Shown here in pieces: positions 10,267-29,251 of a stretch of 64,000 nucleotides of DNA (its first letter is position 1; the number at the start of each line of letters is the position of its first letter). Origin of the DNA: Obrimoposthia wandeli (taxonomy: Eukaryota). A program made the translations under genes and the position numbers. Under the pieces are notes generated by a model, which had not been told where the DNA came from, searched no databases, and was given only the letters and a program-made list of their open reading frames with translations. The DNA is taken from positions 1 through 64,000 of the forward strand of contig CDROCS010001143.1 of the NCBI GenBank assembly GCA_977020255.1, read 5' to 3'.

Positions 10267-10866
10267 TCAAATGGATAGAAAAAATTTGTAGGTGATCTGC
10301 TTTAATTGAATGTTTTTCCATATGGATTCAAAAACAATTTCCGCATTGCTATTTACTTTATCTTTTATAAAAAATGTAACTCGCTTCTCGTTACGTAATT
10401 TTGATTGAGGTAGAATTGAAGCACCAATACCCAAGGGTGCCCATTCAGATAAAACTTGATAACTCATCGCATTTCCCGTGTATTCATGTAATTTTTTACG
10501 CTGTGTACGAAACAATAAACGTGTTGTACGTGATAAGCCACAAGCATCGGGCACCATCACATAAAGTTCATTGGCTATATCTTTAAATGCAACATAGTTT
10601 TTCCCATTTTGAGGTTGGTATCCCCCTCCTCTTGGTACATAAAGTAAAGGCTCATCATAAAGTGCTGTATGTTCCCAAGATCCAGTATAAATACCTGCCA
10701 AACCAAAGCCGAAGTCAATCAGCTTTTGGTCAAGAATTTGATGAAGGTCCTCCATATTCATCTCACGTAAAACGATCTCAATGGCAGGATTTTTCTGACG
10801 AAAGGGTTCTAGAATCAACCCCATTTTATGGGTATCAATCAAGGGAGATATCCCAATACGGATAAA
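10267..10866 (-). pseudogene. LysR-family regulator, effector domain only (HTH lost)
   Basis: IRIGISPLID...FRQKNPAIEIVLRE...LYDEPLLYV...GIGASILP; upstream sequence is the antisense strand of an IS5 remnant. Confidence 0.7.
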
Positions 10867-11523
10867 GATGGCCTGCCAAAGAAAGATCAAGAGGCCTGGC
10901 ATGTAAAAAACGACAGTCGAGGCAGGCAGAAATCCACGTATGGTTATTCTGTGCATACTGGCGTAGATGAAGATGGTTTTATTCATAGCCAATGTGTCAC
11001 TGCAGGTAATGTTCATGATAGCCAAGAGCGGGATTCCTTGATACTTGGAGATGAAGCGAAGCTTTATGCGGATGCAGCTTATAGTTCTAAAGAGACGAGA
11101 GACACATTAGAAGAACTGGGTATCGAAGATCAAGTTCAGCGCAAAGGTTATCGAAACAGCTCACTGACAGAGCAAGATAAGGTTCGTAACGCCGAGATTG
11201 CAGTAACTAGAGCAGGTGGAGCGTCCATTTGCAGCGTACAAAACACATTATGGACTAACCCGTACTCGCTTTATGGTACTTGCTAAAAATGAGACTCTTT
11301 TTGGATTAGCAGCAATGGCAGCAAACATAAGAAAAGGCGCTAGACTTTTAATGTTGTATGGTTTGCCAGAAATAGAAACCACAGGACAAATGCCTCTAAT
11401 GTGGGAAATACTATGAGTTCAAAGGCGGTTAGACGAAAAATCCAAAATTTTCAAGAATTTAACCTGACTTTTTTACCAAACTGGAGCTAATCGAAAAAAG
11501 TTAGAACTTATACTGAGGTCTCA
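10861..11523 (+). mobile_element. 5'-truncated, frameshifted IS5-family remnant related to the element at 211-1407
   Basis: WHVKNDSRGRQKSTYGYSVHTGVDEDGFIHSQ identical to the first copy; frameshift near TRAGG/ERPF (~11220); right IR ttatactgaggtctca at 11508-11523. Confidence 0.85.
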
Positions 11524-11650: not shown

Positions 11651-12541
11651 TTAAACTGATTGTTTCAATGTCTGCCTAGCTGCGCCTAAGACAATACGAC
11701 TGACCTCATCTATTGTTGTTGAAGTAAGCTCCCAAGTCTTCCAAAAAAGTTCAACTCTAAAAACATGCTGATCAAGTAATATTACTTCTTTATTATCTAT
11801 TTTTTCTTCTATTAAAAAGTGTGGCAATGGAGCCCACCCAATATTTTTTTGAACCATTTCTAAGATTCCTTTAGAGCTTGGTACAAAGTGACGTTTAACA
11901 CTTTCGGGCGATAAATTATATTTTTGTAACAGCGAATCTCCTGAATAATCTTCGTTTGAAAAATATATAACCGGAGCATCAGATAATGCTTTACTATTGA
12001 CTCCTTGTTTAAAATGCTGTTGATAGAATTCATTAGAACAAACAGGGAAGTACTCTAGAACTCCAAGGCTGTTACTTTTACAACCGGGAACAGCTTCGGG
12101 ATTAGGTGTGATTGCAGCAATAACAGTTCCATCCCTAAGCATTTTTTCAGTTGCGACTTTATTAGTACTGTGGATATCTAATAGCAAATCGGTTTCTCGG
12201 CCTATTACTATTATTGCATCTAAAAACCAAGATTTCAGAGAGTCGTAATTGGTTGCAATCGAAACTGTAGTTTTTCCATAGTTATCTTCTTCTGCTAATT
12301 GATTTAGCATTTCTTCTTGCAATAATGAGATTTTTCGTGCGAAAAGCATTATTTTCCCACCAATTGTTGTAAGTTTTGGTGGATTACTACGGATCAGAAT
12401 TGGGCTGCCTAACTGATTTTCTAGGGACTTAATACGCTGGGAAACAGCTCCAGTCGTTATAAATAATGTTTGTGAAGCAGCTTCAAACCCTCCTTTGTCA
12501 ACAATAGCAATTAACGTTAGCAGCTCTTGATGATTATACAT
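11651..12541 (-). CDS. ArgP/LysG-subfamily LysR regulator
   Basis: GAVSQRIKSLE...LIRSNPPKLT HTH and ATNYDSLKSWF (cf. AVNADSLATW of ArgP); divergent from the ABC operon. Confidence 0.85.
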   Translation of the reverse strand: MYNHQELLTLIAIVDKGGFEAASQTLFITTGAVSQRIKSLENQLGSPILIRSNPPKLTTIGGKIMLFARKISLLQEEMLNQLAEEDNYGKTTVSIATNYDSLKSWFLDAIIVIGRETDLLLDIHSTNKVATEKMLRDGTVIAAITPNPEAVPGCKSNSLGVLEYFPVCSNEFYQQHFKQGVNSKALSDAPVIYFSNEDYSGDSLLQKYNLSPESVKRHFVPSSKGILEMVQKNIGWAPLPHFLIEEKIDNKEVILLDQHVFRVELFWKTWELTSTTIDEVSRIVLGAARQTLKQSV

Positions 12542-12660
12542 AAACCCCTCTCTTTAGCTTTTCTAAACATTGTATAGTTATTTTAGTTTTTTTAAAATTC
12601 ATTTTTTATTTATGATAATCCTACATCACCGCTTTTGTGATGCTAAACATCGGGGATAGT

Positions 12661-13437
12661 ATGATTAATAAACTACCAGCACTTGAAATAAGAAATTTAC
12701 ATAAAAGTTATGGCAACGTAGAAGTTCTCAAAGGGATCGATATTTGCGCTAATAAAGGAGATGTCATTTCGTTGATTGGCTCGTCAGGCTCTGGAAAAAG
12801 TACTCTTTTACGATGCATTAATTTATTAGAAACACCCAATTCAGGCAGAATCATTGTCCGTGGCGAAGAAATTGCAATGAATAAAAATCGTCAAGGTATA
12901 TACGCTCCATTAAATATGCGTCAAGTTGAGCGTATGCGCTCACGGTTAGCCATGGTTTTTCAAGGTTTTCACCTTTGGCCTCATATGACGGTTTTAGAAA
13001 ACGTTATTGAAGGCCCAGTTCACGTACTAGGCGTACCTAAAAAGGAAGCGATAGAGCAAGCAGAGTCCATTCTAAAGAAAGTGGGTATATATGATCGTGC
13101 GCAGTACTATCCTAACCATATGTCCGGTGGTCAACAGCAAAGAGCAGCTATTGCCAGAGCGTTAGCTATGAATCCTGAAATCATACTGTTCGACGAGCCA
13201 ACATCTGCGCTTGATCCCGAATTAGTCTCTGAAGTATTGAAAGTGATGCACGATTTAGCAGAGGAAGGCAGAACAATGATTGTCGTTACACATGAAATGG
13301 CGTTTGCAAGAGAAGTTTCCACACAGGCTATTTTTCTTCATCAAGGGGTAATTGAAGAGCAAGGTTCCCCTGATGAATTGTTTTCAAACCCCAAATCTGA
13401 AAGATTTCGACAGTTTCTAGCAAGCTCCAATAGTTGA
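12661..13437 (+). CDS. Polar amino-acid ABC transporter ATPase (HisP/AotP type)
   Basis: [34 protein letters not shown]. Confidence 0.93.
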
Positions 13438-13574
13438 TAGACCTTATTGAACCTGCTTGAAATATCGAATCGCTCGTTTATGTCTACCATTAATAATGCG
13501 CTTCAAAAATGTGGCTTCGGTTTTCGCAAGCCATTCACAAAACAGTCATCAATATGTATAAAACGGAGAATACT

Positions 13575-14345
13575 ATGTTTAAAAAAATAGCCATTCCAGC
13601 AATGACACTCATCACTTGCCTAACCCCGCACATTACCCAAGCATCCGATTTACTTCGAATCGGTGTTGAGGGGGCTTATCCTCCTTTTTCTGAGAAGAGC
13701 CCTAATGGAGAAATAATCGGTTTTGATGTAGATATTGCTTATGCCCTATGCGCTGAACTAAAACGAGAGTGCGTTATGGTTGAACAAAATTGGGACGGTA
13801 TGATTCCAGGGCTATTCGCCAAAAAATATGATGCCATTATCGCCTCGATGACGATAACTGAGCAGAGGCAAAAGAAAATCGATTTCTCAGAAAAATACTA
13901 TGCAACACCTGGTCGATTTGTATCGAAAAGCAATACGTTTTTGAATGACGACCCTGCCACGTTGGCTGGAAAAGTGATTGGCGTGCAATCATCAACGCCA
14001 CATGCCGACTATTTAAATTCAGTATATAAACAATCAAATATAAGACAATACAGCTCTCAAGAGGAAGTTTATTTAGACTTATCTGCTGGTCGACTGGATG
14101 CAATCCTCGCAGATGCGATCGCGCTCAATAGTGGTTTTTTAAAAACAGATAGTGGCAAGGGCTTTTCCTTTTTTGGTAAAGAACATACCGATAAAAAATT
14201 CTTTGGGGAAGGTTTAGGAATAGGCGTTCGCAAAGGTGACGAACTCAAAAATAAATTTAGCGACGCAATTAAAATCATACGCAAAAATGGTGTTTATCAG
14301 TCTATAAATGCTAAATATTTTGATATTGATATCTACGGAGAATAA
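13575..14345 (+). CDS. Basic amino-acid ABC substrate-binding protein (AotJ/ArgT/HisJ type)
   Basis: Signal peptide, LRIGVEGAYPPFS, IIGFDVDIA, WDGMIPGL, IIASMTITEQR; start at MFKK with GGAG upstream. Confidence 0.9.
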   Translation: MFKKIAIPAMTLITCLTPHITQASDLLRIGVEGAYPPFSEKSPNGEIIGFDVDIAYALCAELKRECVMVEQNWDGMIPGLFAKKYDAIIASMTITEQRQKKIDFSEKYYATPGRFVSKSNTFLNDDPATLAGKVIGVQSSTPHADYLNSVYKQSNIRQYSSQEEVYLDLSAGRLDAILADAIALNSGFLKTDSGKGFSFFGKEHTDKKFFGEGLGIGVRKGDELKNKFSDAIKIIRKNGVYQSINAKYFDIDIYGE

Positions 14346-14444
14346 AAAACCGTTTCCAGTAATCGTAGAACATTTATCTGATCCAGCAACAATATAAGCT
14401 TTACTTATTAAACATCTATTACGTGCTAATACGGAGCTAAGTAA

Positions 14445-15386
14445 ATGATTGAAAACATCAAAGTATATAATGAAGAAACCGTTTTAAAAAACATTGACCG
14501 AAGCAAGATAACGGATGTATTGAAAAAGGCCTTCAAAGGCCTTGCAGATGGCTCTACTGTTCAGCCAAAGCAGACACTAACAACAATGCCAAACCAGTCT
14601 GGGGATTGCATTTTTTACCCGGGTGTTATTCACGATTTGGACTTAATAGGCGTCAAACTTTCCCCTTATATAAAAGCTCGCAGCGATAACGGAGAAAGCC
14701 CCGTCACTGCATACACGTTGTTAATGTCAGCGACGACAGGCATTCCAACTCTGCTCTGCGACTCCTACGCTTTAACGACATTACGCACTGCGGCCACTAC
14801 TGCACTGGCTTTAGAATTATTAACCGATAAAAAAGCAAAAAACCTGTGCTTAATAGGCTCTGGTACTCTGGCAAAAGAGCACCTTGCTTTTGTAGAAGGT
14901 CAAAAAGATTGGCAAAAAATATCCGTTTGGTCTCCGTCATTAAAGGAGCAGCCTAAAAAAATTGATGATCTTCAAAGTGTATGCCAGCAACCTCTATCAA
15001 TAGCGTCATCCGCAAAATCAGCAGTGGAAGATGCTGATGTGATCATGCTTTGCACCTCATCTGCAACAGCTGTTATCGATTGTGAATGGCTAAAAGCAGA
15101 TGCAGTTGTGACATCAATCAGCACTAACGCCGTTAACGCTCATGAAATTTCTCCTGACGATCTCAACAATTTTTCGGTCTTCTGCGACTATAAAAAAACA
15201 GCACCGAGTACCGCTGGTGAAATGGTGCTTGCTATCGAATCTAATGATTGGAAAGAAGAAAAAATTATTGGGGATTTATCTGACTTAATCTCAGGAAATG
15301 TAGAGAAACCGAATACAGGTCGGCTTTATTTCCGATCGACAGGGTTAGGCCTAGAAGATTTAGCGATTGCCAGTCTTTTAATGTAA
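14445..15386 (+). CDS. Ornithine cyclodeaminase/mu-crystallin family imine reductase, DauB-like
   Basis: VKLSPYI, VTAYTLLMS, RTAATTA, LCTSSATAVID, VTSISTNA..AHE, CDY...P..AGEM, FRSTGLGLED closely follow P. aeruginosa DauB motifs as recalled. Confidence 0.75.
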   Translation: MIENIKVYNEETVLKNIDRSKITDVLKKAFKGLADGSTVQPKQTLTTMPNQSGDCIFYPGVIHDLDLIGVKLSPYIKARSDNGESPVTAYTLLMSATTGIPTLLCDSYALTTLRTAATTALALELLTDKKAKNLCLIGSGTLAKEHLAFVEGQKDWQKISVWSPSLKEQPKKIDDLQSVCQQPLSIASSAKSAVEDADVIMLCTSSATAVIDCEWLKADAVVTSISTNAVNAHEISPDDLNNFSVFCDYKKTAPSTAGEMVLAIESNDWKEEKIIGDLSDLISGNVEKPNTGRLYFRSTGLGLEDLAIASLLM

Positions 15387-15504
15387 TAAGCACCTTCAGT
15401 TACTGGTTTCAAACAATTTACACGTCCTCTTAAAGAGAACGTTCTCAATAGTTTTCCTAATCAGAAACGCAATAAACGCCTTAACTAAATATAGGAATAT
15501 CAGA

Positions 15505-16572
15505 ATGACTATCAATGCTTCTCAAATAAACACTCTGCGTGAGTTATCACAATGGCCACGCGCGTCATTGGCTCAACTTCCGACTCCAATGCATCGTTTG
15601 CCCAATTTTGCTTCCCATTTAGGAGGCTTAGACCTATGGGTAAAACGTGATGACTTAACAGGGTTAGCCGGTGGGGGCAATAAAACTCGAAAGCTCGAGT
15701 TTTTAATCGGCGAAGCAATTGACAAGGATTATGACGTGTTGGTCACTGTTGGAGCGATTCAATCGAATCATACACGCCAAACAGCAGCAGCAGCCGCTAA
15801 AATGGGGATGGAATGCGCACTAATGCATGCTGGTTGGACAGATCATAATGACAATTTCTATCGCAGTGCAGGTAATATTTTATACAGCAAGTTAATGGGA
15901 GCAGACTTATATGAGGATAAAGAAAAACGGCCAATAGAGGATGAAAGCCCACTGAACGGGTTAATTGATCACCTTAAAAATAAAGGGAAGAAACCCTATT
16001 TAATTCCCGGTGGCGCATCAGATCACCCTTTAGGCGGACTAGGTTACGTTGTTTGCGCCGCGGAAATTGTAGAACAAGCAGCAAAGGAGGGACAACAATA
16101 TGACTACGTTGTGCATTGTACCGGTAGTGGTAGCACACAAGCAGGACTACTAGCAGGATTCGCAGCGTTGAACGTAAAAACAAAAGTTGTTGGCATTCCT
16201 GATGATGATGAAACAGAAATAAAAAAGAAACGAGTTTTACGTATTGCCAATGATACTTTAAAAATATTGGGGAAACAGGAATCTATTACTGAAGATGATG
16301 TAGAAATCATAGTAGGCGACAAAGGCGTCTATGGTATCTCTGATGAAGATACCTTCAATGCTATTGAGCTGTTCGCTAGTAGCGAAGGTTTAATCGCGGA
16401 TCCGGTATACGAAGGTAAGGCTGTGAGAGGTATTATAAATCTAGCCAAAAGCGGTTACTTTGAAAAGAACAGTAAAGTCTTACTCATGCATTTAGGGGGA
16501 GAGCCAGCTACCCATGGCTACGCTAGCCAATATAGCCCGATTGAGTTCATGTCAGTTTCGACAAACAAATAA
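15505..16572 (+). CDS. PLP-dependent ACC deaminase/D-cysteine desulfhydrase family enzyme with ACC-deaminase diagnostic residues
   Basis: KRDD, GGNKTRKLE (PLP Lys), QSNHTRQ, DHPLGGLGY, DPVYEGK and HLGG. Confidence 0.85.
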   Translation: MTINASQINTLRELSQWPRASLAQLPTPMHRLPNFASHLGGLDLWVKRDDLTGLAGGGNKTRKLEFLIGEAIDKDYDVLVTVGAIQSNHTRQTAAAAAKMGMECALMHAGWTDHNDNFYRSAGNILYSKLMGADLYEDKEKRPIEDESPLNGLIDHLKNKGKKPYLIPGGASDHPLGGLGYVVCAAEIVEQAAKEGQQYDYVVHCTGSGSTQAGLLAGFAALNVKTKVVGIPDDDETEIKKKRVLRIANDTLKILGKQESITEDDVEIIVGDKGVYGISDEDTFNAIELFASSEGLIADPVYEGKAVRGIINLAKSGYFEKNSKVLLMHLGGEPATHGYASQYSPIEFMSVSTNK

Positions 16573-16824
16573 AAGATCAGCAATTTTTAGCTTTGCTTTA
16601 CAAAACATAAAAGCTATTTGCAGGTTTTTTATCTCTTAATTAAATTGTAAAACAATCGATTAAGCTTGCTTTCTCTATAAATTCGAATGCTTGGCGGGTA
16701 ATGAGGTGCCCGCTCTTATATTGCTTAATAGCTACGTTTCGTTTTGTTTTTTCAACTTATCAACCAACAGTTATTAGCACACAGAGAAAATTGATCGCTT
16801 GTTCCATATAAAAGGTGGGGTTCG

Positions 16825-17517
16825 ATGGAACAAATTTGGGAGTTTAGAGTACTACTTTTACAAGGCATTGGCTGGACAGTCTTACTTTCAGTTTGCGCTG
16901 TTTTATTAGCCGTTTTATTAGGTCTCTTGGGTGCATGGGGTAAGCTGAGTAAAAACACCACTGCCAATAGAATAACGAATAGTTACACCACATTAATAAG
17001 AGGGATACCCGATTTAGTGTTGATGTTATTACTTTTTTATGGAGGGCAACAAGTACTCAATGATATTGGTCAACGAACTGGTTTATGGTCCTATATAGAG
17101 ATTAATCAATTTTCGGCTGGCGCATTAACCATTGGATTTATCTTTGGTGCTTATATGACGGAGACTTTTCGGGGAGCGTATTTATCAATTCCTCGTGGGC
17201 AAATTGAAGCAGCCATTGCCTGTGGTATGACTAAATTATTAATATTCAGAAGAGTTCTGTGGCCTCTAATGGTCAAATTCGCTTTGCCTAGTTTTACAAA
17301 CAACTGGTTAGTCCTCATAAAAACTACCGCTCTTGTCTCTGTTTTAGGTTTGCAAGAACTAACCTATATTTCAAAAACAGTAGGTTTGAAATATCAAGCA
17401 CCTTTTACTTTTCTAGCATTTGCACTTATTGCTTATTTGCTAATAACTGCGCTTTCTGAAATAGGATTAAAGTGGTTAGCCAATAGATACAATGTTAACT
17501 CGATAAGGAAAATTTAA
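16825..17517 (+). CDS. Polar amino-acid ABC permease (HisQ type)
   Basis: YTTLIRGIPDLV, EAA-like GQIEAAIACGM, hydrophobic segments. Confidence 0.9.
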   Translation: MEQIWEFRVLLLQGIGWTVLLSVCAVLLAVLLGLLGAWGKLSKNTTANRITNSYTTLIRGIPDLVLMLLLFYGGQQVLNDIGQRTGLWSYIEINQFSAGALTIGFIFGAYMTETFRGAYLSIPRGQIEAAIACGMTKLLIFRRVLWPLMVKFALPSFTNNWLVLIKTTALVSVLGLQELTYISKTVGLKYQAPFTFLAFALIAYLLITALSEIGLKWLANRYNVNSIRKI

Positions 17518-18248
17518 TGGATAGTTTTAGCTTTCTAAATTGGGGTTTCATCAATTGGAACTTACCTCTTAATCACTGGAGCTTATTTGTATTAGGTACT
17601 TGGAATACAATCGCACTCACTTTGCTATCTTTAACTATAGGCTGGTTATTATCTGTCCCCATGTCTTTAGTAAGAGTGAATAAGCACCCTGTTTTCAATC
17701 GGCCGGTTTGGATTTTTACCTATTTTTTCCGAGGAACGCCACTGCTTATACAATTATTTTTAATCTATTATGGCGCGGGCCAGTTTGAAGTTGTTAGGCA
17801 AAGTATTTTTTGGGTAATACTTAAAGACCCTTGGTGGTGTGCACTTATTGCTTTTTCTTTAAACAGTGCCGCTTATCAAACAGAAATATTGAAAGGTGCT
17901 ATCCAAACAACAACACCTGGAGAAATTGAAGCAGCCAAGTCTTTAGGAATGAGCCAGAATAAACGTTTTTATCGAATTATATTACCCAGTTCCATTCGTC
18001 GCGCGCTTCCAATGTATTCTAATGAAATTATCTTTATGCTGCATGGCAGTGTCATTGCAAGTACCATCACCATTATAGATATATTAAAAGCGGGCCGAAT
18101 GGTAAACGGGCAATATTACGTCGCTTACGAGGGTTTTATTACAGCCGCAATTCTTTATATGGCACTGGTGTTTATTATTACCCGCCTATTAAAACGATTA
18201 GAGAATAGTTGGCTTATTCATTTAAGGCCAAGAGTGAACACTGATTAA
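17517..18248 (+). CDS. Polar amino-acid ABC permease (HisM type)
   Basis: FRGTPLLIQLF, GEIEAAKSLGMS; overlaps the previous stop by 1 nt. Confidence 0.9.
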   Translation: MDSFSFLNWGFINWNLPLNHWSLFVLGTWNTIALTLLSLTIGWLLSVPMSLVRVNKHPVFNRPVWIFTYFFRGTPLLIQLFLIYYGAGQFEVVRQSIFWVILKDPWWCALIAFSLNSAAYQTEILKGAIQTTTPGEIEAAKSLGMSQNKRFYRIILPSSIRRALPMYSNEIIFMLHGSVIASTITIIDILKAGRMVNGQYYVAYEGFITAAILYMALVFIITRLLKRLENSWLIHLRPRVNTD

Positions 18249-18268: not shown

Positions 18269-19309
18269 CCTGATTAGCCATGTTACTCCGCTATAGATAA
18301 CTGATCAAAAAAATCAGTACTATGTTTCTGTACAGTTATTTGTTTTGGAGGCTATTATGTCAATTAATCAGGTTCAATACCAAAAAGGCTTTAGCATGTT
18401 CGATTTAATCGAAAGCTATGGCACAGAAGAACAATGTGAAGCTGCATTATTTCAATGGAGATGGCCACAAGGTTTTATTTGTATCGTGTGTCAACATACA
18501 GGCTACTGTCGTTTAAAAAACCGTAAACTCTTTCAGTGTAATAAGTGCCATCAACAAACTTCTTTGACCAGTAACACTTTGTTTTCATGTACTAAATTAT
18601 CCCTTACCGTTTGGTTTATGGCAATGCATTTAATTACTCAATCTAAAACCAGCATTTCTGCTCTCGAGCTAAAGCGGCAGCTTGGGGTTAACTATAAAAC
18701 CGCATGGTCTATAAGGCATAAGCTACTTCAAGGGATGAAAGAGTTTAACGATAAAAACCCTATTGATGGGACGATACAGTTAGACGATGTTTACTGGGGT
18801 GGAGAGCATCGAGGTGGCAAGCGTGGACGAGGCTCAGAAAATAAAACGCCCTTTGTCGCAGCCGTATCAATCGACGAGAAAGGCCGCCCTATTCGCCTGA
18901 AAATGACAGTAGTTGATGGATTTAGAAAAAAGACCATCGAAGAATGGGCAAGGAAGCATTTAAAAGAGGGAAGTGAAGTTATATCAGACAAGCTAGCTTG
19001 TTTTACAGCGGTAACAGCAGCGGGGTGTGAGCATACCAGAATCAAATGCGGCGGCAATCTTGAACTGCTTGATAGTAAGGAGTTTAAATGGGTTAATACG
19101 ATGATTGGTAATGTGAAAACGGCTTTAACAGGAACCTGTCACTCTATTAATTCGAAACATTTACCTCGATATTTGGCTGAGTTTTGTTTTAGGTTTAATC
19201 ATCGCTTTAATCTTAGAAAACTACTGCCAATATTAGGTGAAATTATGACTAAAACTCCACCAATGCCGAAAAAATATTTGAAACTGGCGGAGTCATGTGG
19301 CTAATCAGG
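18269..19309 (+). mobile_element. IS1595-family insertion sequence
   Basis: Imperfect 23-bp IRs cctgattagccatgttactccgc / gcggagtcatgtggctaatcagg (CCTGATT end); flanks tagttttt and tagttgaa match only in part. Confidence 0.88.
18357..19304 (+). CDS. IS1595-family transposase
   Basis: Zn ribbon (CIVC..C..C), IQLDDVYWGG...GKRGRGSENK, ISD, YLAEFCFRFN. Confidence 0.93.
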   Translation: MSINQVQYQKGFSMFDLIESYGTEEQCEAALFQWRWPQGFICIVCQHTGYCRLKNRKLFQCNKCHQQTSLTSNTLFSCTKLSLTVWFMAMHLITQSKTSISALELKRQLGVNYKTAWSIRHKLLQGMKEFNDKNPIDGTIQLDDVYWGGEHRGGKRGRGSENKTPFVAAVSIDEKGRPIRLKMTVVDGFRKKTIEEWARKHLKEGSEVISDKLACFTAVTAAGCEHTRIKCGGNLELLDSKEFKWVNTMIGNVKTALTGTCHSINSKHLPRYLAEFCFRFNHRFNLRKLLPILGEIMTKTPPMPKKYLKLAESCG

Positions 19310-19390: not shown

Positions 19391-19960
19391 TTATAACTCT
19401 ACTGTTGAGTCCTTAAGCCAACCCCAAAAGAATCGAGTTTGAGTTCGGTCAACGTAGAGCTCAAATACTGATTCTTGTAAACGCACAATCATTACAGCTA
19501 TTCCCGCAGCCTTGGTAATGGTACAAGAGTTTATAGGAAACGATTTTAGCTCTAAATTAAGAGTGCATATTTTACTAAGTAAAAATTCGACCTTATCTCC
19601 TGTAATAGAATACACAGTTCTGCTATCAGTAATCATCGTAGCAAGCGCAGCTTTACCAGTAGTTAGCTGTTGTAACGTATATAAAATTTCAGTTTCTTTC
19701 CCTTCTGGTGTAACGAACAACCACTCATTCGGAGTTAGCCAATGGCAACGAAATTGCTCACCAATCACAATCCCGCCAGGCCCTGGAAGCGTAGACACCT
19801 TTTCTTCTACAGACATCCTAAATGCTCTGTCATCTTCTGGCGGTCCCTGCAAGCGAACCATTCCAAAAGACTTGCTCTGCTTAATAGTCATTCCATTAAG
19901 AGTGATTTCCACATCAGCAACTGCTCCTTCTAAGGCAGCTCGCGATACTAACTTATCCAT
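19391..19960 (-). CDS. soxG: Sarcosine oxidase gamma subunit
   Basis: WLTPNEWL, LLSKICTLNL, YVDRT; position after soxA. Confidence 0.85.
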   Translation of the reverse strand: MDKLVSRAALEGAVADVEITLNGMTIKQSKSFGMVRLQGPPEDDRAFRMSVEEKVSTLPGPGGIVIGEQFRCHWLTPNEWLFVTPEGKETEILYTLQQLTTGKAALATMITDSRTVYSITGDKVEFLLSKICTLNLELKSFPINSCTITKAAGIAVMIVRLQESVFELYVDRTQTRFFWGWLKDSTVEL

Positions 19961-22946
19961 TCAACCTCTCCCCTTTGGCATCCAAATGAGAAGCCTGAAC
20001 CAACTTCACTTCAATGGTAGTACCGTTTGAATAAACAAAATTTCTTTCTCCAATCCTTTCAAAGGCACTTTCAACTAATCCAAGTCCGATATGTTTTTTC
20101 AAGCTCGGACTATAATAAGCTGATGTGAGATACCCTTGCGTTTTCTCAGGCATCTGAGGATTAGCGGAACTGACGAAATGACCACCAATAGGTAGCACCT
20201 CATTTTGATTTATCGCTTCTACACCGATGAATTGAAAACGATCTTTTCTCGCATCATTAGGTCTACTTAAGGATCTTCGCCCTATAAAATCAGCGCTTTT
20301 CTTGGCAATCGCTCGTCCCCATCCCAAATCAAGGGGGTTGGTTGTTCCATCAGTATCAACACCGATATGGAGATAACCTTTCTCAGTTCTTAGGACCAAG
20401 AGAGATTCAATACCATACGGCGTAATACCAACGCCTTCACCAGCCTTAAAAATTGTTTCCCATAATGATTGACCATAACGCGCAGGCACACATATTTCAT
20501 ATGATATTTCACCGGTAAAGCTTGCTCGCAAGACCCGCGCCTCAACGCCATTAATCAGTCCCATACGCATTTGCATATGCGGGAAGCTTTCTCGTTCAAA
20601 ATCGATATCTGAATCAAGCAGCTTCACAATATCACGGGCTTTTGGACCGCTGACAGTAACATTTGCCCACTGTGTTGTTGCATTACAAATGATTACCTGT
20701 AAGTCAGTCCACTCACATTGCAACCACTCTTCCATCCATAAACTTATACGAGAAGCACCAGCACTCGTTGTATGTACTAAGAAGTGATCATCACAGAGAC
20801 GAACAAAGATGCCGTCATCAATAACCACTCCATTTTCGTTACACATCAAGCCATAACGAGCTGATCCAACTTTGAGGCTTATAACATTATTAACGTATAT
20901 ACGGTTCAAAAATTTAGCGGCGTCAGGTCCTTTAACTTCAATTTTCCCTAGAGGTGAACCATCAAACATGCCTACGTTATTTCTGACTTCAAAAACTTCC
21001 CGTCGGATAGCTTCTTCTTCCGTCTCACCTGATCGCAAATAAAACTCTGGTCGCAACCAGCCCATATCTTCCATATGTGCACCATTATCGATATGCCATT
21101 GATGTGCAGGCATTTCAAATTTAGGTGAATAATTGTCCCCGATTTCACGACCGGCAAATGTACCTATAGTCACTGGATTATAGGGTGGACGAAAACGAGT
21201 AGTACCCACATTTTCTATTTTCTTACCGCTAAGTTCAGCCATCACCGCAAGCGCATTAACGTTACTGGTTTTACCCTGATCTATACTCATGCCATTAGTG
21301 GTATAACGTTTAACATGCTCTACAGACAGAAAGTTTTCAAGCTTAGCAAGCTCAATGTCTGAAACCTTCACATCATATTGAAAATCGAGCCATTGTTTCT
21401 CTGTAGGCGCGCTTTTAGTATACCAATAATCTTCTCTTGCCTCTTCTATGAACTCATCACATTGAACGGCCTTCGGCTCAGTAGAACTTAAATCGCCTGC
21501 AACGCTAGCTCCTGCAACCTGCCCTTCTTGTAAACATTCTGTAAGACGAAAATTGCCATTAGCAGCACCGACAACCGTGACATTCTGAGTACACGTTTGA
21601 GGAACAAAGCAAGAGCGCTCTTCATCAAAATAAAGCTGGCCTCCGGCTTGCGAATAAAGATGAATTGTTGGAGTCCATCCTGCAGACATCGCAACCACGT
21701 CACATTTAATAGTTTCGATGACTTGACCTAAGTGACCATCTCCAGAATGCTCGGCAATAGTGACAGCTTTTACTTCCCTTCTGCCATGCACCTTATGAAT
21801 CATCGCTCCCATAAACAACGGAATATTCATTTCTTTTATCTTTGCCTGATAATCACCGTCACACCCAGAACGCGTATCAATGACTGCTGCAACGTCAACC
21901 CCTGCATCCTTCATATCCATAGCAACGCGATAAGCATGATCGTTATTGCAGACAACAACTGTCCGCTGCCCTGCCTGCACTCCGTAACGATTAAGATAAC
22001 ACTGAACACCCGATGCAAGCATAATCCCTGGTCGATCATTATTTGGGAATACCAGTGGACGCTCTATTGCGCCTGTCGCTAAAACAACATGCCCAGCTCG
22101 AATTCTTAACAACCGTTCTCTGATTTTTCTTTCCGAAAGACCCAAATGATTTGTAACTCTTTGAGCTCCCGCTAAAAAATTCTGATCATAGTAACCACTG
22201 ATGAGTGTTCTTGGCAAAAGAGTAACGTTGGACATTTCTTGCAACTCCACTAACGAGCTTTCAATCCACTCAATAGCACTTTGATCTCCAATTTTTCTAT
22301 TTTCTCCCAGAAGGCTGCCACCAAACTCTTCTTGAGCATCTACCAATAGCACTTTTACACCACTACGCCCTGCTGCTAGAGCCGCAGATAATCCTGATGC
22401 ACCACCACCACATACAAGCACGTCACAATGAAAATTACGCTTGTCGTATTGTTGTTTATCAGGAAGCTCTGGTAATTTACCAAGACCCGCCATTTTTCGA
22501 ATAACACCTTCGTAAAAATGCCAGCTTGGCCACATCATTGATTTATAATAAAATGAAGCAGGAAACATTCGATGAAACAGACTTAATACACTAAATATAT
22601 CACGGTCAACGTTAGGCCATGAATTCTGACCTTTTGCATTCAACCCTTCATATAAAGGTACGAGCGTAGCACGAGCATTTGGTTCATCATATCCCGAACC
22701 TGACTCAAGCTGGAACAAAGCATTAGATTCTTCAATCCCTGCGCTCATTAATCCTCTGGGACGATGCAGTTTAAAACTCCGCCCAACACGCTTCACATTA
22801 TTGGCTAAAAGAGCCGATGCGAGAGTATCTCCCTTACAGCCAATATATGTTTTTCCATCAAACTTAAAAGTTACCGGTTTTGACGGATCAACCCTGTGCG
22901 CTGTTGGTGCTCGCACTAGGGGATCAACTCTTTTTGGCTGACTCAT
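19953..22946 (-). CDS. soxA: Sarcosine oxidase alpha subunit
   Basis: GDTLASALLAN, FYYKSMMWP, EHVKRYTT, GKTSNVN, TTRFRPPY and GcvT-like folate-binding C-terminus. Confidence 0.93.
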   Translation of the reverse strand: MSQPKRVDPLVRAPTAHRVDPSKPVTFKFDGKTYIGCKGDTLASALLANNVKRVGRSFKLHRPRGLMSAGIEESNALFQLESGSGYDEPNARATLVPLYEGLNAKGQNSWPNVDRDIFSVLSLFHRMFPASFYYKSMMWPSWHFYEGVIRKMAGLGKLPELPDKQQYDKRNFHCDVLVCGGGASGLSAALAAGRSGVKVLLVDAQEEFGGSLLGENRKIGDQSAIEWIESSLVELQEMSNVTLLPRTLISGYYDQNFLAGAQRVTNHLGLSERKIRERLLRIRAGHVVLATGAIERPLVFPNNDRPGIMLASGVQCYLNRYGVQAGQRTVVVCNNDHAYRVAMDMKDAGVDVAAVIDTRSGCDGDYQAKIKEMNIPLFMGAMIHKVHGRREVKAVTIAEHSGDGHLGQVIETIKCDVVAMSAGWTPTIHLYSQAGGQLYFDEERSCFVPQTCTQNVTVVGAANGNFRLTECLQEGQVAGASVAGDLSSTEPKAVQCDEFIEEAREDYWYTKSAPTEKQWLDFQYDVKVSDIELAKLENFLSVEHVKRYTTNGMSIDQGKTSNVNALAVMAELSGKKIENVGTTRFRPPYNPVTIGTFAGREIGDNYSPKFEMPAHQWHIDNGAHMEDMGWLRPEFYLRSGETEEEAIRREVFEVRNNVGMFDGSPLGKIEVKGPDAAKFLNRIYVNNVISLKVGSARYGLMCNENGVVIDDGIFVRLCDDHFLVHTTSAGASRISLWMEEWLQCEWTDLQVIICNATTQWANVTVSGPKARDIVKLLDSDIDFERESFPHMQMRMGLINGVEARVLRASFTGEISYEICVPARYGQSLWETIFKAGEGVGITPYGIESLLVLRTEKGYLHIGVDTDGTTNPLDLGWGRAIAKKSADFIGRRSLSRPNDARKDRFQFIGVEAINQNEVLPIGGHFVSSANPQMPEKTQGYLTSAYYSPSLKKHIGLGLVESAFERIGERNFVYSNGTTIEVKLVQASHLDAKGERLNG

Positions 22947-23278
22947 ACCGCCACCTTCTTCACATCAGTTTTAACTATATTTTCAATTTTATCAGCGTTC
23001 TTACCTTCAAAAGAAGGCCGTTCGCCCATTAAATATATTTCTATGACTTCATGGGTAACTGTATCTCGAGCAACATTAAACCATTGCCGACATCCAAAAG
23101 TATGACGCCAACGCTCAAGAAGAACTCCTTTAGTGTTGGCCCTATTAAACAAGTAATGCGCCCACTCATCATCAGACAGGATGGATGGATCTTCAGGTCG
23201 GATAACATGCGCTTCTCCACCCCAATCAAATTCATCTTCATCACGGGTGCCGCACCACGGGCAATCAATTCTTAACAT
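22943..23278 (-). CDS. soxD: Sarcosine oxidase delta subunit
   Basis: CPWCGTRDEDEF, ERWRHTFGC Zn ligands. Confidence 0.92.
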   Translation of the reverse strand: MLRIDCPWCGTRDEDEFDWGGEAHVIRPEDPSILSDDEWAHYLFNRANTKGVLLERWRHTFGCRQWFNVARDTVTHEVIEIYLMGERPSFEGKNADKIENIVKTDVKKVAV

Positions 23279-23305
23279 TATTATTCTCCTATAATTCGAC
23301 AGCAG

Positions 23306-24556
23306 TTAATGAGCTACACCAGCTGCAGCGCCCTCATCGACAAGAGCTCCTTCTGCAAACCTAGCCATCGAAAAAGGTTTTATCAATTCATGTGGTTGGT
23401 CATGTGCAATGGTATATGCGAGCGTGTCACCACCCGCGGGAATTGCTTTAAATCCACCCGTACCCCAACCACCGCTAATATACAAACCAGTAATAGGAGT
23501 TTTACCTATAATAGGACTTGAATCTGGTGATAGATCAACAATTCCGGCCCACTGACGCATTAATTTAAGGCGACTGAAACTCGGAAATAGCCCGAGTGTC
23601 GCTGAAAGCGTTTCTTCCAACGTAGGAAGATTACCGCGCTGACCATAAGATGGATAACGATCGGCACCGCCACCAATAAGAATCTCCCCTCTATCAGACT
23701 GACTAACATATGCATGGACTAACGGCGAGACCACCACTCCTTCCAAACACTTTTTAATCGGTTCACTAACCATCGCTTGTAAAGGCTGGCTCAAAATAGG
23801 TACGGACAGTCCCGCCATTTCTGCAAGCATGCTTGTGTGACCTGCTACGGCAAATGCTACTTTGTCGGCTTTAATATATCCTTGACTCGTCGATACGCCT
23901 AAAACCCGATTTCCTGAAACCTTAATATCTTTTACTTCACAGTTTTGAATAATATCTACACCATGATTATCTGCTCCACGAGCATAACCCCAAGCGACTG
24001 CATCATGACGCGCAACTCCTCCTCTACTCTGAACATACCCACCCCATATTGGAGATCGTGCATCTTTAGACACATCTAGAAGTGGATTTTTTTTCTGGAT
24101 GCCTTCACGGCTAAGCATTTCAGCATCAACGCCTTGCAACTGAAGCGAGTTAGACCAGCGTTCAAGCATTTCCATATCGTGCCGACTATGCCCTAGCACT
24201 GTCATGCCTCCTTGGCTCAACATGACATTGTAGTTAAGCTCACGGGACAGATCTTCATAAAGTTTCAACGAGTAGTCGAAGAAATTTGTACTCTGAGGGT
24301 AAAAATAATTAGAACGTACAACCGTCGTATTCCGACCAGTATTTCCACCGCCAATCCAGCCCTTTTCAAGTACGGCAACATTGTTAATGCCATATTTTTT
24401 AGACAGATAATATGCGGTAGCTAATCCCTGACCTCCGCCACCGATAATGACAACATCGTATGACTTTTTGGGTTCAGGGCTTCGCCACTGAGCGGTCCAA
24501 TTTTTATGACCACTTAGAGAGTGCTTAGCGACTTGTAGTAAAGAAAACTTATCCAT
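23306..24556 (-). CDS. soxB: Sarcosine oxidase beta subunit
   Basis: GGGGQGLATAYYL, GGGNTGRNTT, ARHDAVAWG (covalent FMN His), GWGTGGFKA. Confidence 0.94.
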   Translation of the reverse strand: MDKFSLLQVAKHSLSGHKNWTAQWRSPEPKKSYDVVIIGGGGQGLATAYYLSKKYGINNVAVLEKGWIGGGNTGRNTTVVRSNYFYPQSTNFFDYSLKLYEDLSRELNYNVMLSQGGMTVLGHSRHDMEMLERWSNSLQLQGVDAEMLSREGIQKKNPLLDVSKDARSPIWGGYVQSRGGVARHDAVAWGYARGADNHGVDIIQNCEVKDIKVSGNRVLGVSTSQGYIKADKVAFAVAGHTSMLAEMAGLSVPILSQPLQAMVSEPIKKCLEGVVVSPLVHAYVSQSDRGEILIGGGADRYPSYGQRGNLPTLEETLSATLGLFPSFSRLKLMRQWAGIVDLSPDSSPIIGKTPITGLYISGGWGTGGFKAIPAGGDTLAYTIAHDQPHELIKPFSMARFAEGALVDEGAAAGVAH

Positions 24557-24643
24557 CTGGTTTGCCTTTTTATTATTTAATATAAGCTATAAGCTACGAA
24601 TGCTTGATTTTGTTCTCTGCTTAATTAACAAATACAAGCTGCA

Positions 24644-24737
24644 ATTAAGTCACACGGATTAACAACAAGTCAAGCAGCTTACGTAAAAAAATAGATAATT
24701 AATCCTCTTGACTTAGTGTTAATCCGTGTGGCTTAAT
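24644..24737. promoter_or_regulatory. 31-bp imperfect inverted repeat in the soxB/dctP divergent promoter
   Basis: Arms 24644-24674 and 24707-24737 match at 28/31 positions, 32-bp spacer. Confidence 0.7.
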
Positions 24738-24823
24738 CGAGATGAGACCGTTTCCAGTACTCAAGCTTTAGAACTATGCTGAGTGGTAACTCAACCAAAT
24801 AAATATAGAAACAGGGAAAACTC

Positions 24824-25819: not shown

Positions 25820-25980
25820 CTGACCTTTAACACTCAAGCCTTTTGACACTTCATTAGGCTTCTTACTTTGTTAATACTCTTGATTAAATACATTAGGAAT
25901 ATTATCAAAAGCTGAAATAGAAATATTAAAAATAAACTCTGTATTATTACCTATTTAATAATAAAAATTCAGGCAAAAAA

Positions 25981-26499
25981 ATGAGTAATTTAATAAAAAA
26001 AATAGATTCTATATTAGAAAAAACATTACACACAATAGCAATTATTAGTACTTTAACGGTTACTGGACTCATGTTGTTTTTGGTTTTTTCTCGCTACGTA
26101 ATGGGCTGGTCTATTATTGGCCTACATGAAGTTATTCTAATGGCTGCTATGTGGCTTTACATGGCCGGCGCAATGATTGCGTGCAGGCGAAACGAGCACC
26201 TCACAGTCGACCTTTTACATCAAAAAATAACCTCACCTTTCTGGAAAATTATCCACTTCAGATTCGTATCTTTTGTTACCCTGATTACTTGCATGTTCTT
26301 TATGGCTTGGTCTTATAAACTACTAGGCTGGGAACTTAAACGCCCTCAAAGTACACCAGGACTCGGTCTACCACTAATAATTCCGCAATTAGCTATTATC
26401 ATTACAAGCATATTCGCCTTTATATATGGTATCCGCGATTTTATTCGAGGTGCACCATATAACACTAACATCACTAACAATAATCCAAAGGAATACTAG
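25981..26499 (+). CDS. TRAP small permease (DctQ)
   Basis: Four hydrophobic segments, RY...EV...W, HLTVDLL. Confidence 0.87.
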   Translation: MSNLIKKIDSILEKTLHTIAIISTLTVTGLMLFLVFSRYVMGWSIIGLHEVILMAAMWLYMAGAMIACRRNEHLTVDLLHQKITSPFWKIIHFRFVSFVTLITCMFFMAWSYKLLGWELKRPQSTPGLGLPLIIPQLAIIITSIFAFIYGIRDFIRGAPYNTNITNNNPKEY

Positions 26500-26501
26500 C
26501 C

Positions 26502-27791: not shown

Positions 27792-27887
27792 TTTCTCTTT
27801 TCATTTAAGCCAATAAACATCAATAACATAAGAAGGGCATGAAAATGCCCTTTAACGTATCCATATGAAATAAGAGGAGGTCAGAAA

Positions 27888-29006: not shown

Positions 29007-29251
29007 ACTCCGTTATACCCACTTTTTTTGCTTCAGTGTTAAAGTCATCCTCTATACTTCTAATTAAATATCTAATCAAAAAAGTTGCATGCCTTTAGCC
29101 ACATATATTAACGGCTTTTGTCTTATACTGTTCTTCAACAGCATGTTTTTCAGGTGCCTTGCCGTTTTTCATATTCCTTATCCAGTACACATTCATACCA
29201 CCAATATTTCGCGCCATTTCTAAGATAAAGCCAGACTCAAGTGATGCTTAC

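What the first reader, a model, noticed from the sequence alone, without database searches (positions are those of the whole stretch)
11651..18248. Candidate undescribed pathway: arginine-type ABC operon enclosing an ACC-deaminase-like lyase and a DauB-like imine reductase
Seen: an ArgP-type regulator is divergent from ATPase - SBP - DauB-like - ACC-deaminase-like - two permeases, all on one strand. Established: ACC deaminase opens an aminocyclopropane ring to an imine/2-oxo acid; DauB reduces 2-ketoarginine/iminoarginine to L-arginine and is normally paired with DauA. Inference: the PLP enzyme replaces DauA as the imine source, so the operon imports an arginine analogue and converts it to L-Arg. 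A chemically exact candidate is carnosadine (1-amino-2-guanidinomethyl-cyclopropane-1-carboxylate, recalled as a red-algal amino acid), whose C1-C2 ring opening gives 2-ketoarginine. Alternatives are beta/gamma-substituted or D-configured basic amino acids, or ACC itself giving 2-aminobutyrate.
Basis: partly seen in the sequence, partly recalled or inferred. Interest (0 to 1): 0.88.

Follow-up and report, generated by a model that had tools for sequence, protein, structure and literature searches.

The report
Arginine-type importer operon with ACC-deaminase-like lyase
A rare bacterial operon joins a basic-amino-acid importer to an ACC-deaminase-type enzyme and an arginine-dehydrogenase-type reductase, probably turning an unidentified arginine look-alike into ordinary L-arginine; the substrate has not been identified.

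Summary
An ArgP/LysG-type regulator (11651-12541, minus strand) faces six plus-strand genes: HisP-like ATPase, LAO-type binding protein, DauB-family reductase, ACC-deaminase-type PLP enzyme and two permeases.

- **Reductase:** it is about 50% identical to Pseudomonas DauB, which has a solved structure (8j1c). It keeps all 73 positions that are at least 95% conserved among 119 family homologs.
- **PLP enzyme:** it carries the ACC-deaminase diagnostic pair E295/L322. It falls below the curated AcdS, CuyA and DcyD cut-offs. It belongs to a large unnamed sister family of AcdS whose sampled members stand alone.
- **Distribution:** the seven-gene layout and a promoter dyad recur in two Marinomonas genomes, with two more probable environmental fragments. 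None of about 130 other loci holding a PLP homolog has the reductase next to it.
- **Transporter:** the nearest non-operon relative is the same ABC operon without the two enzymes.

The best reading, at about 0.5, is import of a cationic amino-acid analogue. The lyase would deaminate it to a 2-imino/2-oxo acid, and the reductase would make the L-amino acid, most likely L-arginine. Carnosadine is chemically consistent with this but has no direct support (about 0.1). I class it as a new variant of known lyase-plus-imine-reductase couples (BhcB/BhcD, DauA/DauB).

The parts
11651..12541 (-). ArgP/LysG-type LysR transcriptional regulator, divergent from the operon
   Evidence: NF002964 291.5 bits (cut-off 197) and TIGR03298 278.6 (cut-off 273.55). 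Orthologs at 59-67% identity sit in the same position in both Marinomonas operons.
12553..12567 (.). Conserved dyad TTTAG-N5-CTAAA (T-N11-A type) in the divergent promoter; probable binding site of the LysR regulator
   Evidence: Alignment of the three intergenic regions. This block is nearly invariant while the rest of the spacer diverges. Its role as an operator is inferred.
12661..13437 (+). HisP-like ABC ATPase (the ORF opens at GTG 12637; the probable start is ATG 12661)
   Evidence: PF00005 123 bits; best NCBIfam match HisP at 366.7 bits, below its cut-off. GGGGA lies 5 nt upstream of ATG 12661. The orthologs are 258 aa.
13575..14345 (+). Periplasmic LAO/HisJ-type substrate-binding protein (the ORF opens at 13509; the probable start is 13575, with a signal peptide)
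   Evidence: TIGR01096 252.5 bits; best solved relative is LAO-binding protein (197 bits). The equivalents of LAO R77, D161, D11, Y14 and F52 are R120, D202, E54, Y57 and W95. The operon-clade signature is T115, S162, P/A164 and L236.
14445..15386 (+). DauB-family (OCD/mu-crystallin) NAD(P)H-dependent dehydrogenase / imine reductase
   Evidence: PF02423 135 bits. PDB 8j1c scores 267.8 bits, far above the next structure at 87.6, and 8j1c is an ortholog of Pseudomonas DauB. JGI names the homologs 'L-arginine dehydrogenase'. All 73 of 73 family-invariant positions are kept. The IGSGTLA Rossmann motif is present (alignment).
15505..16572 (+). ACC-deaminase-type fold-II PLP lyase, in an unnamed sister family of AcdS
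   Evidence: PF00291 160 bits. CuyA model 349.6 (cut-off 450), AcdS TIGR01274 326.2 (cut-off 392), DcyD family 258.8 (cut-off 289.4). K60, S87, Y276, Y302, E303 and L330 correspond to K51, S78, Y268, Y294, E295 and L322 of 1rqx.
16573..16824 (.). 252-bp spacer between the lyase and permease genes, longer than in Marinomonas (73 and 116 bp)
   Evidence: It holds one weak hairpin at 16693-16714. It matches no Rfam family and is unique in the assembly. Its function is unknown.
16825..17517 (+). HisQ-like ABC permease
   Evidence: PF00528 76.6 bits; NF011714 229 bits.
17517..18248 (+). HisM-like ABC permease
   Evidence: PF00528 71.1 bits; NF011651 217 bits.
10828..11286 (+). IS5-family transposase fragment flanking the operon on the regulator side
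   Evidence: NF033581 85.6 bits, partial match to the profile.
18345..19304 (+). IS1595-family transposase directly downstream of the last permease gene
   Evidence: NF033547 214.5 bits; PF12762 and PF12760.

Best explanation
The operon is a self-contained unit for taking up a modified basic amino acid and converting it to a usable one. An ordinary LAO-type ABC importer has two enzyme genes inserted between its binding-protein and permease genes.

The proposed steps are:
1. The importer brings in a cationic amino acid that differs from arginine around C-alpha/C-beta. Candidates are a 2-substituted 1-aminocyclopropane-1-carboxylate, a D-configured beta-substituted analogue, or a beta,gamma-unsaturated analogue.
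2. The ACC-deaminase-type PLP enzyme carries out its family's chemistry (ring opening or alpha,beta-elimination). It releases an enamine/2-imino acid that equilibrates with the 2-oxo acid plus ammonia.
3. The DauB-family enzyme reduces or reductively aminates this with NAD(P)H to the L-amino acid, most likely L-arginine via 2-ketoarginine.
4. The ArgP/LysG-type regulator switches the operon on in response to a basic amino acid.

Shown here: the gene content, the family placements, the active-site signatures and the conservation of the unit. Inferred: the order of the steps, the coupling between the two enzymes, the product and the substrate class.
For: - **Conserved unit.** Seven genes in the same order in three genomes at 59-81% identity, with a conserved promoter dyad. 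Two more probable fragments exist.
- **Plain transporter as relative.** The nearest non-operon relative of the binding protein (Curvivirga, 65%) sits in the same ATPase-SBP-permease-permease operon without the enzymes. The enzymes are therefore an add-on to a basic-amino-acid importer.
- **Reductase.** It is a typical DauB-family member: 268 bits to 8j1c, a Pseudomonas DauB ortholog. All 73 invariant positions are kept and there are no clade-specific substitutions.
- **Lyase.** It has the catalytic Lys, Ser78, Tyr294 and the E295/L322 pair that separates AcdS from D-cysteine desulfhydrase and CuyA (PMC4048297; PMC11193023). It groups with AcdS at 99/97 support.
- **Substrate range of AcdS.** Canonical AcdS accepts coronamic acid, vinyl-ACC, D-vinylglycine and beta-substituted D-amino acids (PMC4048297).
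- **Binding protein.** It keeps the distal cation pocket (E54, Y57, W95) and the alpha-carboxylate/ammonium anchors (R120, D202). Its clade-specific changes fall in the segments that align with LAO S72 and loop 117-122.
- **Lyase-specific changes.** Against 118 family members the operon lyases have A109, G274 (smaller residues) and E333 (a new acidic residue) within 2-3 residues of W102, Y268 and L322.
- **Precedent.** BhcB/BhcD pairs a PLP dehydratase with an OCD-family iminosuccinate reductase (6rqa; papers listed). In DauA/DauB the imine/keto acid feeds DauB (PMC5619798).
Against: - No biochemical data exist for any of the proteins or for the wider lyase family.
- The reductase is only about 50% identical to characterised DauB. 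In the tree it sits with homologs from unrelated NACHT/FGE-sulfatase clusters, not with Pseudomonas DauB.
- The pairing is absent from all other sampled loci of the lyase family and from a genome carrying a 61% homolog. Co-occurrence evidence therefore rests on one small clade and could be a single fusion event spread by transfer.
- The binding protein is 65% identical to generic arginine/ornithine binders, so it may simply import L-arginine.
- A 252-bp spacer with a weak hairpin separates the enzymes from the permease genes in this window.
- No RNA data were found.
Confidence: 0.5

Rival explanations
1. The substrate is carnosadine, or a similar guanidino-substituted ACC. Opening of the C1-C2 bond gives 2-ketoarginine, which the DauB-like enzyme converts to L-arginine.
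For: - The mass balance is exact (C6H12N4O2 + H2O -> C6H11N3O3 + NH3; my own arithmetic).
- Carnosadine is a 1-aminocyclopropanecarboxylic acid (reference cited in PMC10179847).
- AcdS turns over 2-ethyl-ACC (coronamic acid) and vinyl-ACC (PMC4048297).
- The lyase keeps E295/L322.
- The lyase has smaller residues at 109 and 274 and a new Glu at 333.
- The binding protein's changes cluster at the C-alpha end of the pocket.
Against: - From memory, carnosadine is known from one red alga. No catabolism of it has been described; only one paper in the library mentions the word.
- The host assembly lacks phycobiliproteins.
- The closest operons are in Marinomonas. From memory, M. pollencensis came from a seagrass.
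- No residue-level model of the pocket was possible with these tools.
Confidence: 0.1
2. The operon is an ordinary L-arginine/L-lysine/L-ornithine importer with two accessory catabolic enzymes that are not coupled. The DauB-like enzyme runs oxidatively (L-arginine to 2-ketoarginine). The PLP enzyme separately removes ACC, D-serine or D-cysteine-type compounds.
For: - The binding protein is 65% identical to binders in plain ABC operons and shares their distal pocket.
- DauB-type enzymes are reversible dehydrogenases (established knowledge of DauB; PMC5619798).
- Sampled members of the wider lyase family stand alone, with no conserved neighbours.
Against: - Both enzyme genes are kept between the SBP and permease genes in all three genomes.
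- The lyase is the most conserved protein of the unit (78-81%) and has its own clade-specific substitutions.
- No downstream 2-ketoarginine genes are in the operon.
- The binding protein carries clade-specific changes in segments that contact the ligand.
Confidence: 0.2
3. The imported compound is a lysine- or ornithine-type analogue. Its 2-oxo acid cyclises to a delta-1-piperideine- or pyrroline-2-carboxylate, and the OCD-family enzyme reduces that to L-pipecolate or L-proline.
For: - The best NCBIfam hit of the reductase is the bifunctional Pyr2C/Pip2C reductase model (132 bits).
- Ketimine reductases are common in this superfamily (6t3e and 4bv8; PMC3958920).
- LAO-type binders take lysine and ornithine.
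Against: - That NCBIfam score is far below its cut-off of 322.
- The protein is much closer to DauB (268 bits) than to any ketimine reductase (88 bits or less).
- It retains all DauB-family invariants.
Confidence: 0.1
4. The operon takes up ACC itself and deaminates it. The reductase acts on 2-iminobutyrate or 2-oxobutyrate, or has an unrelated role.
For: - The E295/L322 signature is present.
- At E<=1e-40 the two operon-bearing Marinomonas genomes show only two ACC-deaminase-family matches, the operon lyase and a CuyA, so no canonical AcdS was found with this query.
Against: - The binding protein has a long cation-binding pocket of LAO type.
- The regulator is ArgP/LysG type, not AcdR/Lrp.
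- The lyase is below the AcdS cut-off and outside the AcdS clade.
- Making 2-aminobutyrate has no obvious benefit (inference).
Confidence: 0.07

Closest known systems
DauA/DauB arginine racemisation couple of Pseudomonas (dauBAR)
   Same: The reductase is a DauB-family homolog: about 50% identity, 268 bits to 8j1c, all family invariants kept. The logic is also the same: an upstream enzyme makes iminoarginine/2-ketoarginine, and DauB makes L-arginine (PMC5619798).
   Different: There is no FAD-dependent DauA and no DauR. A PLP lyase and an ABC importer take their place, and the regulator is ArgP-type. The reductase lies outside the Pseudomonas DauB clade.
ACC deaminase AcdS with its regulator AcdR
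   Same: It has the same fold-II PLP scaffold, the same catalytic Lys/Ser/Tyr and the diagnostic E295/L322 pair. It is the sister clade of AcdS.
   Different: It scores 326 bits against a cut-off of 392 on the AcdS equivalog model. It has no Lrp-type AcdR. It sits inside a basic-amino-acid transporter operon and has clade-specific substitutions.
BhcB/BhcD of the beta-hydroxyaspartate cycle (PLP dehydratase plus OCD-family iminosuccinate reductase)
   Same: The two-step logic is the same: a fold-II PLP lyase releases a 2-imino acid, and an OCD/mu-crystallin-family reductase converts it to the L-amino acid (6rqa; papers).
   Different: The subfamilies of both enzymes differ (BhcD model 85 bits against a cut-off of 500). 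The substrate class differs (acidic against presumably basic). The Bhc genes are not embedded in a transporter operon.
LAO/HisJQMP and AotJQMP-type basic amino acid ABC importers
   Same: The ATPase, binding protein and two permeases are of this type. The nearest relative (Curvivirga) has the same gene order.
   Different: Two enzyme genes are inserted between the binding-protein and permease genes. The binding protein has a clade-specific signature at T115, S162, P/A164 and L236.
D-cysteate sulfo-lyase CuyA / D-cysteine desulfhydrase DcyD
   Same: They belong to the same superfamily, and the CuyA model gives the highest NCBIfam score (349.6 bits).
   Different: The score is below the cut-off of 450. 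CuyA and DcyD have Ser/Thr and Thr where this protein has Glu and Leu (PMC11193023). The Marinomonas genomes with the operon carry a separate true CuyA.

Membership tests
ACC deaminase (AcdS, TIGR01274) | Catalytic residues Lys51, Ser78 and Tyr294 (Pseudomonas numbering) | tested here: met
   K60, S87 and Y302 align with K51, S78 and Y294 of 1rqx.
ACC deaminase (AcdS, TIGR01274) | Diagnostic pair Glu295 / Leu322 | tested here: met
   E303 (DPVYEGK) and L330 (HLGG). The criterion comes from PMC4048297.
ACC deaminase (AcdS, TIGR01274) | Score above the curated equivalog cut-off | tested here: not met
   326.2 bits against a cut-off of 392. True AcdS from Streptomyces and Marinomonas score 517 and 574.
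ACC deaminase (AcdS, TIGR01274) | Placement inside the AcdS clade | tested here: not met
   It falls in the sister clade, made of the unnamed family of about 60% identity. The split from AcdS has 100/100 support (small sample).
ACC deaminase (AcdS, TIGR01274) | ACC deaminase activity | not testable with these tools
   Needs an enzyme assay.
D-cysteine desulfhydrase / D-cysteate sulfo-lyase (DcyD, CuyA) | Ser/Thr at position 295 and Thr at position 322 (StDcyD Thr315) | tested here: not met
   This protein has Glu and Leu instead. HMM-verified CuyA sequences have S/T plus T (PMC11193023).
D-cysteine desulfhydrase / D-cysteate sulfo-lyase (DcyD, CuyA) | Score above the curated cut-offs (NF052482 450; TIGR01275 289.4) | tested here: not met
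   349.6 and 258.8 bits.
DauB (NAD(P)H-dependent L-arginine dehydrogenase, OCD/mu-crystallin family) | Close sequence kinship to DauB of confirmed genomic context | tested here: met
   It is 48-50% identical to Pseudomonas DauB proteins. One of them lies in a dauB-DAO-dauR arrangement. 8j1c is the best solved relative by a wide margin.
DauB (NAD(P)H-dependent L-arginine dehydrogenase, OCD/mu-crystallin family) | Retention of family-invariant positions and the dinucleotide-binding motif | tested here: met
   All 73 of 73 positions that are at least 95% conserved in 119 homologs are kept. The IGSGTLA motif is present.
DauB (NAD(P)H-dependent L-arginine dehydrogenase, OCD/mu-crystallin family) | Genomic pairing with DauA (FAD D-arginine dehydrogenase) and DauR | tested here: not met
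   There is no DAO-family gene in the operon or next to it. The nearest FAD oxidase is 17 kb away, in another cluster.
DauB (NAD(P)H-dependent L-arginine dehydrogenase, OCD/mu-crystallin family) | Placement in the clade of characterised DauB | tested here: not met
   The operon clade nests with OCDs from NACHT/FGE-sulfatase clusters. Pseudomonas DauB is on the opposite side of the tree.
DauB (NAD(P)H-dependent L-arginine dehydrogenase, OCD/mu-crystallin family) | Interconversion of 2-ketoarginine and L-arginine | not testable with these tools
   Needs an enzyme assay. I could not retrieve the ligand-contact residues of 8j1c/8j1g.
Polar amino acid ABC importer, LAO/HisJ type | One ATPase, one family-3 binding protein and two BPD_transp_1 permeases | tested here: met
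Polar amino acid ABC importer, LAO/HisJ type | Alpha-amino-acid anchors and cation pocket of LAO (R77, D161, D11, Y14, F52) | tested here: met
   R120, D202, E54, Y57 and W95, by alignment to 1laf. They are shared with 119 homologs. The roles of these residues are taken from memory of the LAO structures.

The most novel reading that the evidence does not exclude
The operon is a salvage route for a natural cyclopropane (ACC-type) guanidino amino acid such as carnosadine. An AcdS-like enzyme opens the substituted ring to 2-ketoarginine, and a DauB-type enzyme makes L-arginine. This would be the first physiological role for ACC-deaminase chemistry beyond ACC. It would also give a first functional handle on a large orphan sister family of AcdS.
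Probability: 0.12. Interest if true: 0.85.

Novelty: new variant of a known kind. Interest (0 to 1): 0.62.

Why it matters
If the coupling is real, it adds a third example of a recurring metabolic device, after BhcB/BhcD and DauA/DauB. In this device a lyase or oxidase makes a 2-imino acid, and an OCD-family reductase rescues it as an L-amino acid. Here the device would be wired to a dedicated importer and a basic-amino-acid sensor.

It also gives the only informative genomic context found here for a large, widespread, uncharacterised sister family of ACC deaminase. Those examined keep the ring-opening signature.

Identifying the substrate could reveal how marine host-associated bacteria use unusual arginine analogues. 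It could also supply a new enzyme pair for making L-arginine analogues.

Tried and rejected
- **Literature.** Searches for the 8J1C structure paper, for L-arginine dehydrogenase of P. veronii, and for any paper joining ACC deaminase, OCD and an ABC transporter gave nothing usable. The arginine-contact residues of DauB therefore could not be checked.
- **Wider instances of the operon.** The pattern scan of species genomes returned only the Marinomonas MAG and a 61% Woeseiaceae homolog; all other hits were 45% identical or less. The metagenome scan returned no ortholog above 64%.
- **Function of the wider lyase family from context.** The five contexts with annotated neighbours share no neighbour, so no function could be inferred.
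- **A canonical AcdS in the operon-bearing genomes.** I first assumed the 43% paralogs in the two Marinomonas genomes were AcdS. They are CuyA. The argument 'a true AcdS is already present' was dropped.
- **Regulatory signals.** The promoter and terminator scan found sites at chance level only. No Rfam family matches. The 252-bp spacer is not a repeat in the assembly.
- **Host and expression.** Sequencing-run names are coded and no RNA run was found. 'Relatives' of the assembly are not available.
- **Structure tools.** I did not run structure prediction or complex prediction. The tools return no coordinates for a pocket analysis, and I make no claim that the two enzymes bind each other.

Full report
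**1. What is there**

ORF listing and profile searches confirm the described layout exactly.

| Coordinates | Strand | Assignment |
|---|---|---|
| 11651-12541 | - | ArgP/LysG-type LysR regulator |
| 12637-13437 | + | HisP-like ATPase |
| 13509-14345 | + | LAO/HisJ-type binding protein |
| 14445-15386 | + | OCD/mu-crystallin protein |
| 15505-16572 | + | ACC-deaminase-family PLP enzyme |
| 16825-17517 | + | HisQ-like permease |
| 17517-18248 | + | HisM-like permease |

- Two starts probably need correction. The ATPase probably starts at ATG 12661 (ribosome-binding site GGGGA). The binding protein probably starts at ATG 13575, which gives a typical signal peptide. Both match the lengths of the orthologs.
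- The unit is bracketed by an IS5 fragment (10828-11286) and an IS1595 transposase (18345-19304).
- Base composition does not differ from the surroundings.
- The window is a bacterial contig inside a 1.35-Gb, 6912-contig assembly that holds many bacterial contigs, so it is a host-associated bacterium.

**2. The reductase**

- Its best solved relative is 8j1c (267.8 bits; the next structure scores 87.6).
- 8j1c is an ortholog of the protein that NCBI names DauB in Pseudomonas fluorescens (533 bits).
- A Pseudomonas homolog at 48% identity lies in the canonical dauB-DAO(dauA)-dauR arrangement.
- JGI annotates most homologs as L-arginine dehydrogenase.
- In a tree of 120 homologs the operon proteins form a clade with 99% support. 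This clade nests among proteins from a different conserved cluster (NACHT/FGE-sulfatase, OCD, FAD/BBE oxidase, aminotransferase, DAO), not among Pseudomonas DauB.
- The window protein keeps all 73 positions that are at least 95% conserved in the other 119 sequences. It shows no clade-specific replacement at conserved positions.
- 'DauB-like' is therefore justified. The same substrate is plausible but not proven.

**3. The PLP enzyme**

- It scores below every curated cut-off: CuyA 349.6 against 450, AcdS 326.2 against 392, DcyD family 258.8 against 289.4.
- Aligned with Pseudomonas AcdS (1rqx), it has K51, S78, Y268, Y294 and the pair E295/L322.
- That pair is the accepted discriminator of AcdS from D-cysteine desulfhydrase. 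The E295S/L322T mutant loses ACC deaminase activity (PMC4048297).
- CuyA shares the Thr of DcyD at the second position (PMC11193023).
- In my alignment, only HMM-verified AcdS and the query's own family have E/L. CuyA-like and DcyD-like sequences have S/T plus T.
- A tree gives (AcdS, query family) at 99/97 support against the CuyA/DcyD-like sequences.
- The search listed 7,998 homologs at E<=1e-20, capped at 8,000 candidates. The best 120 are 59-81% identical and come from many phyla.
- The five contexts with annotated neighbours are unrelated stand-alone genes. A genome with a 61% homolog has no DauB-like gene.
- Against 118 family members the three operon proteins share V78, A109, Y127, G274 and E333. 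Three of these lie within two or three residues of W102, Y268 and L322 of AcdS. Whether they line the substrate pocket is inference.

**4. Conservation of the unit**

- The same seven genes in the same order occur in Marinomonas pollencensis and in an uncultured Marinomonas MAG.

| Protein | Identity to the window protein in the two Marinomonas genomes |
|---|---|
| Regulator | 59-67% |
| ATPase | 68-75% |
| Binding protein | 70-74% |
| Reductase | 61-66% |
| Lyase | 78-81% |
| Permeases | 70-79% |

- Only 2 of 64 Marinomonadaceae species genomes have the lyase ortholog.
- None of about 130 other fetched loci with a lyase homolog contains the reductase.
- Two further environmental fragments probably belong to the same unit. 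One is a JGI contig with a 76% reductase flanked by co-directional genes at the right spacing. The other is an ENA binding protein (70%) with the full clade signature.
- The divergent promoters share a nearly invariant block holding the dyad TTTAG-N5-CTAAA (12553-12567), a LysR-type T-N11-A site.
- AceE of the window is only 48-49% identical to the Marinomonas proteins. Together with the flanking IS elements, this suggests the unit moves horizontally. AceE paralogy is not excluded.

**5. The transporter and regulator**

- The binding protein's closest solved relatives are the LAO- and histidine-binding proteins.
- By alignment it keeps the alpha-carboxylate and ammonium anchors (R120, D202) and the cation pocket (E54, Y57, W95). 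The roles of these residues are recalled from the LAO structures.
- Its nearest non-operon relative (Curvivirga, 65%) lies in a plain ATPase-SBP-permease-permease operon beside a LysR gene. The window operon therefore looks like that transporter with two enzymes inserted.
- Compared with 119 homologs, the operon binding proteins differ at T115, S162, P/A164 and L236.
- The first three fall in the segments aligned with LAO S72 and loop 117-122, which hold the C-alpha end of the ligand. The distal pocket is unchanged.
- This fits a ligand that resembles arginine at its tail and differs near C-alpha/C-beta. It is a hint, not a proof.

**6. Mechanism**

- The best-supported model is import of a cationic analogue, followed by PLP-dependent ring opening or alpha,beta-elimination to an enamine/2-imino acid. 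NAD(P)H-dependent reduction or reductive amination then gives the L-amino acid, most likely L-arginine.
- Two known systems use the same logic:
  - BhcB/BhcD, where an OCD-family iminosuccinate reductase takes the product of a PLP dehydratase (6rqa; papers).
  - DauA/DauB (PMC5619798).
- Carnosadine fits the stoichiometry, and AcdS accepts 2-alkyl-ACCs. There is no direct evidence for it.
- The host assembly has no phycobiliprotein gene, so a red-algal host is unlikely.
- Rivals are uncoupled catabolic enzymes on a plain arginine importer, a lysine/ornithine analogue giving pipecolate or proline, and ACC itself.
- The 'cysteate only' outcome is unlikely, because the operon-bearing Marinomonas genomes have a separate CuyA that scores 553-556 bits.

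**7. Verdict**

- The general interpretation (lyase feeds reductase, product L-arginine) is plausible at about 0.5.
- The named substrate is speculative at about 0.1.
- The finding is a new variant of a known kind of two-enzyme couple. It is attached to an importer and is rare in distribution.
- It is of real interest because it offers an experimental entry into a large orphan family next to ACC deaminase.
I tested it here and it holds.

Noticed in passing
L005:4135-10033, L006:4191-11770, L007:4216-11498: The DauB-family proteins closest to the window's reductase outside the operon (54-60% identity) sit in a conserved cluster. It reads NACHT/FGE-sulfatase protein, OCD, FAD_binding_4/BBE oxidase, aminotransferase. 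A DAO-family gene follows in two of the three (L006, L007). It occurs in Pseudoalteromonas, Caulobacter and a MAG, next to integrase genes in two cases. Its function is unknown.
   Followed up: partly
P0003-P0120 (homologs of window 15505-16572): A large unnamed family about 60% identical to the window lyase is sister to true ACC deaminase and keeps E295/L322. It passes no curated NCBIfam cut-off. The sampled members stand alone, with no conserved neighbours.
   Followed up: partly
window 35452-43919: This stretch looks like a catabolic cluster for hydroxyproline or a proline derivative. It holds an FAD oxidase, an aldehyde dehydrogenase, a DapA-like lyase, a GcvA-type LysR, an AraC/DJ-1 regulator, a second OCD/mu-crystallin gene (41788-42750) and an enolase-superfamily gene (42819-43919). 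A TRAP transporter follows at 45353-48309.
   Followed up: no
window 19391-33570: Sarcosine-oxidase alpha, beta and gamma subunit genes (soxA, soxB, soxG), a TRAP transporter, a GbdR-like AraC regulator, a BisC/TorA-family molybdoenzyme and PurU lie here. This is a betaine/sarcosine-type one-carbon catabolic region. It is separated from the operon only by the IS1595 copy.
   Followed up: no
window 10267-11286: A LysR-family ORF has only the substrate-binding domain and no HTH. It overlaps an IS5 transposase fragment, so the gene was probably disrupted by insertion. Further IS5-family transposase ORFs lie at 347-1354 and 48594-49406.
   Followed up: no
G000 (whole assembly); window = contig C1143: The assembly has 1.35 Gb in 6912 contigs and holds several different bacterial homologs of both enzymes on other contigs, so it is a host plus its microbes. 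No phycobilisome protein was found. Run and organism names are coded.
   Followed up: partly
L002:9194-9897: In the Marinomonas MAG the HisQ-like permease is called as two ORFs (114 and 120 aa). This is a possible frameshift or assembly error. The contig ends inside the last permease gene.
   Followed up: no
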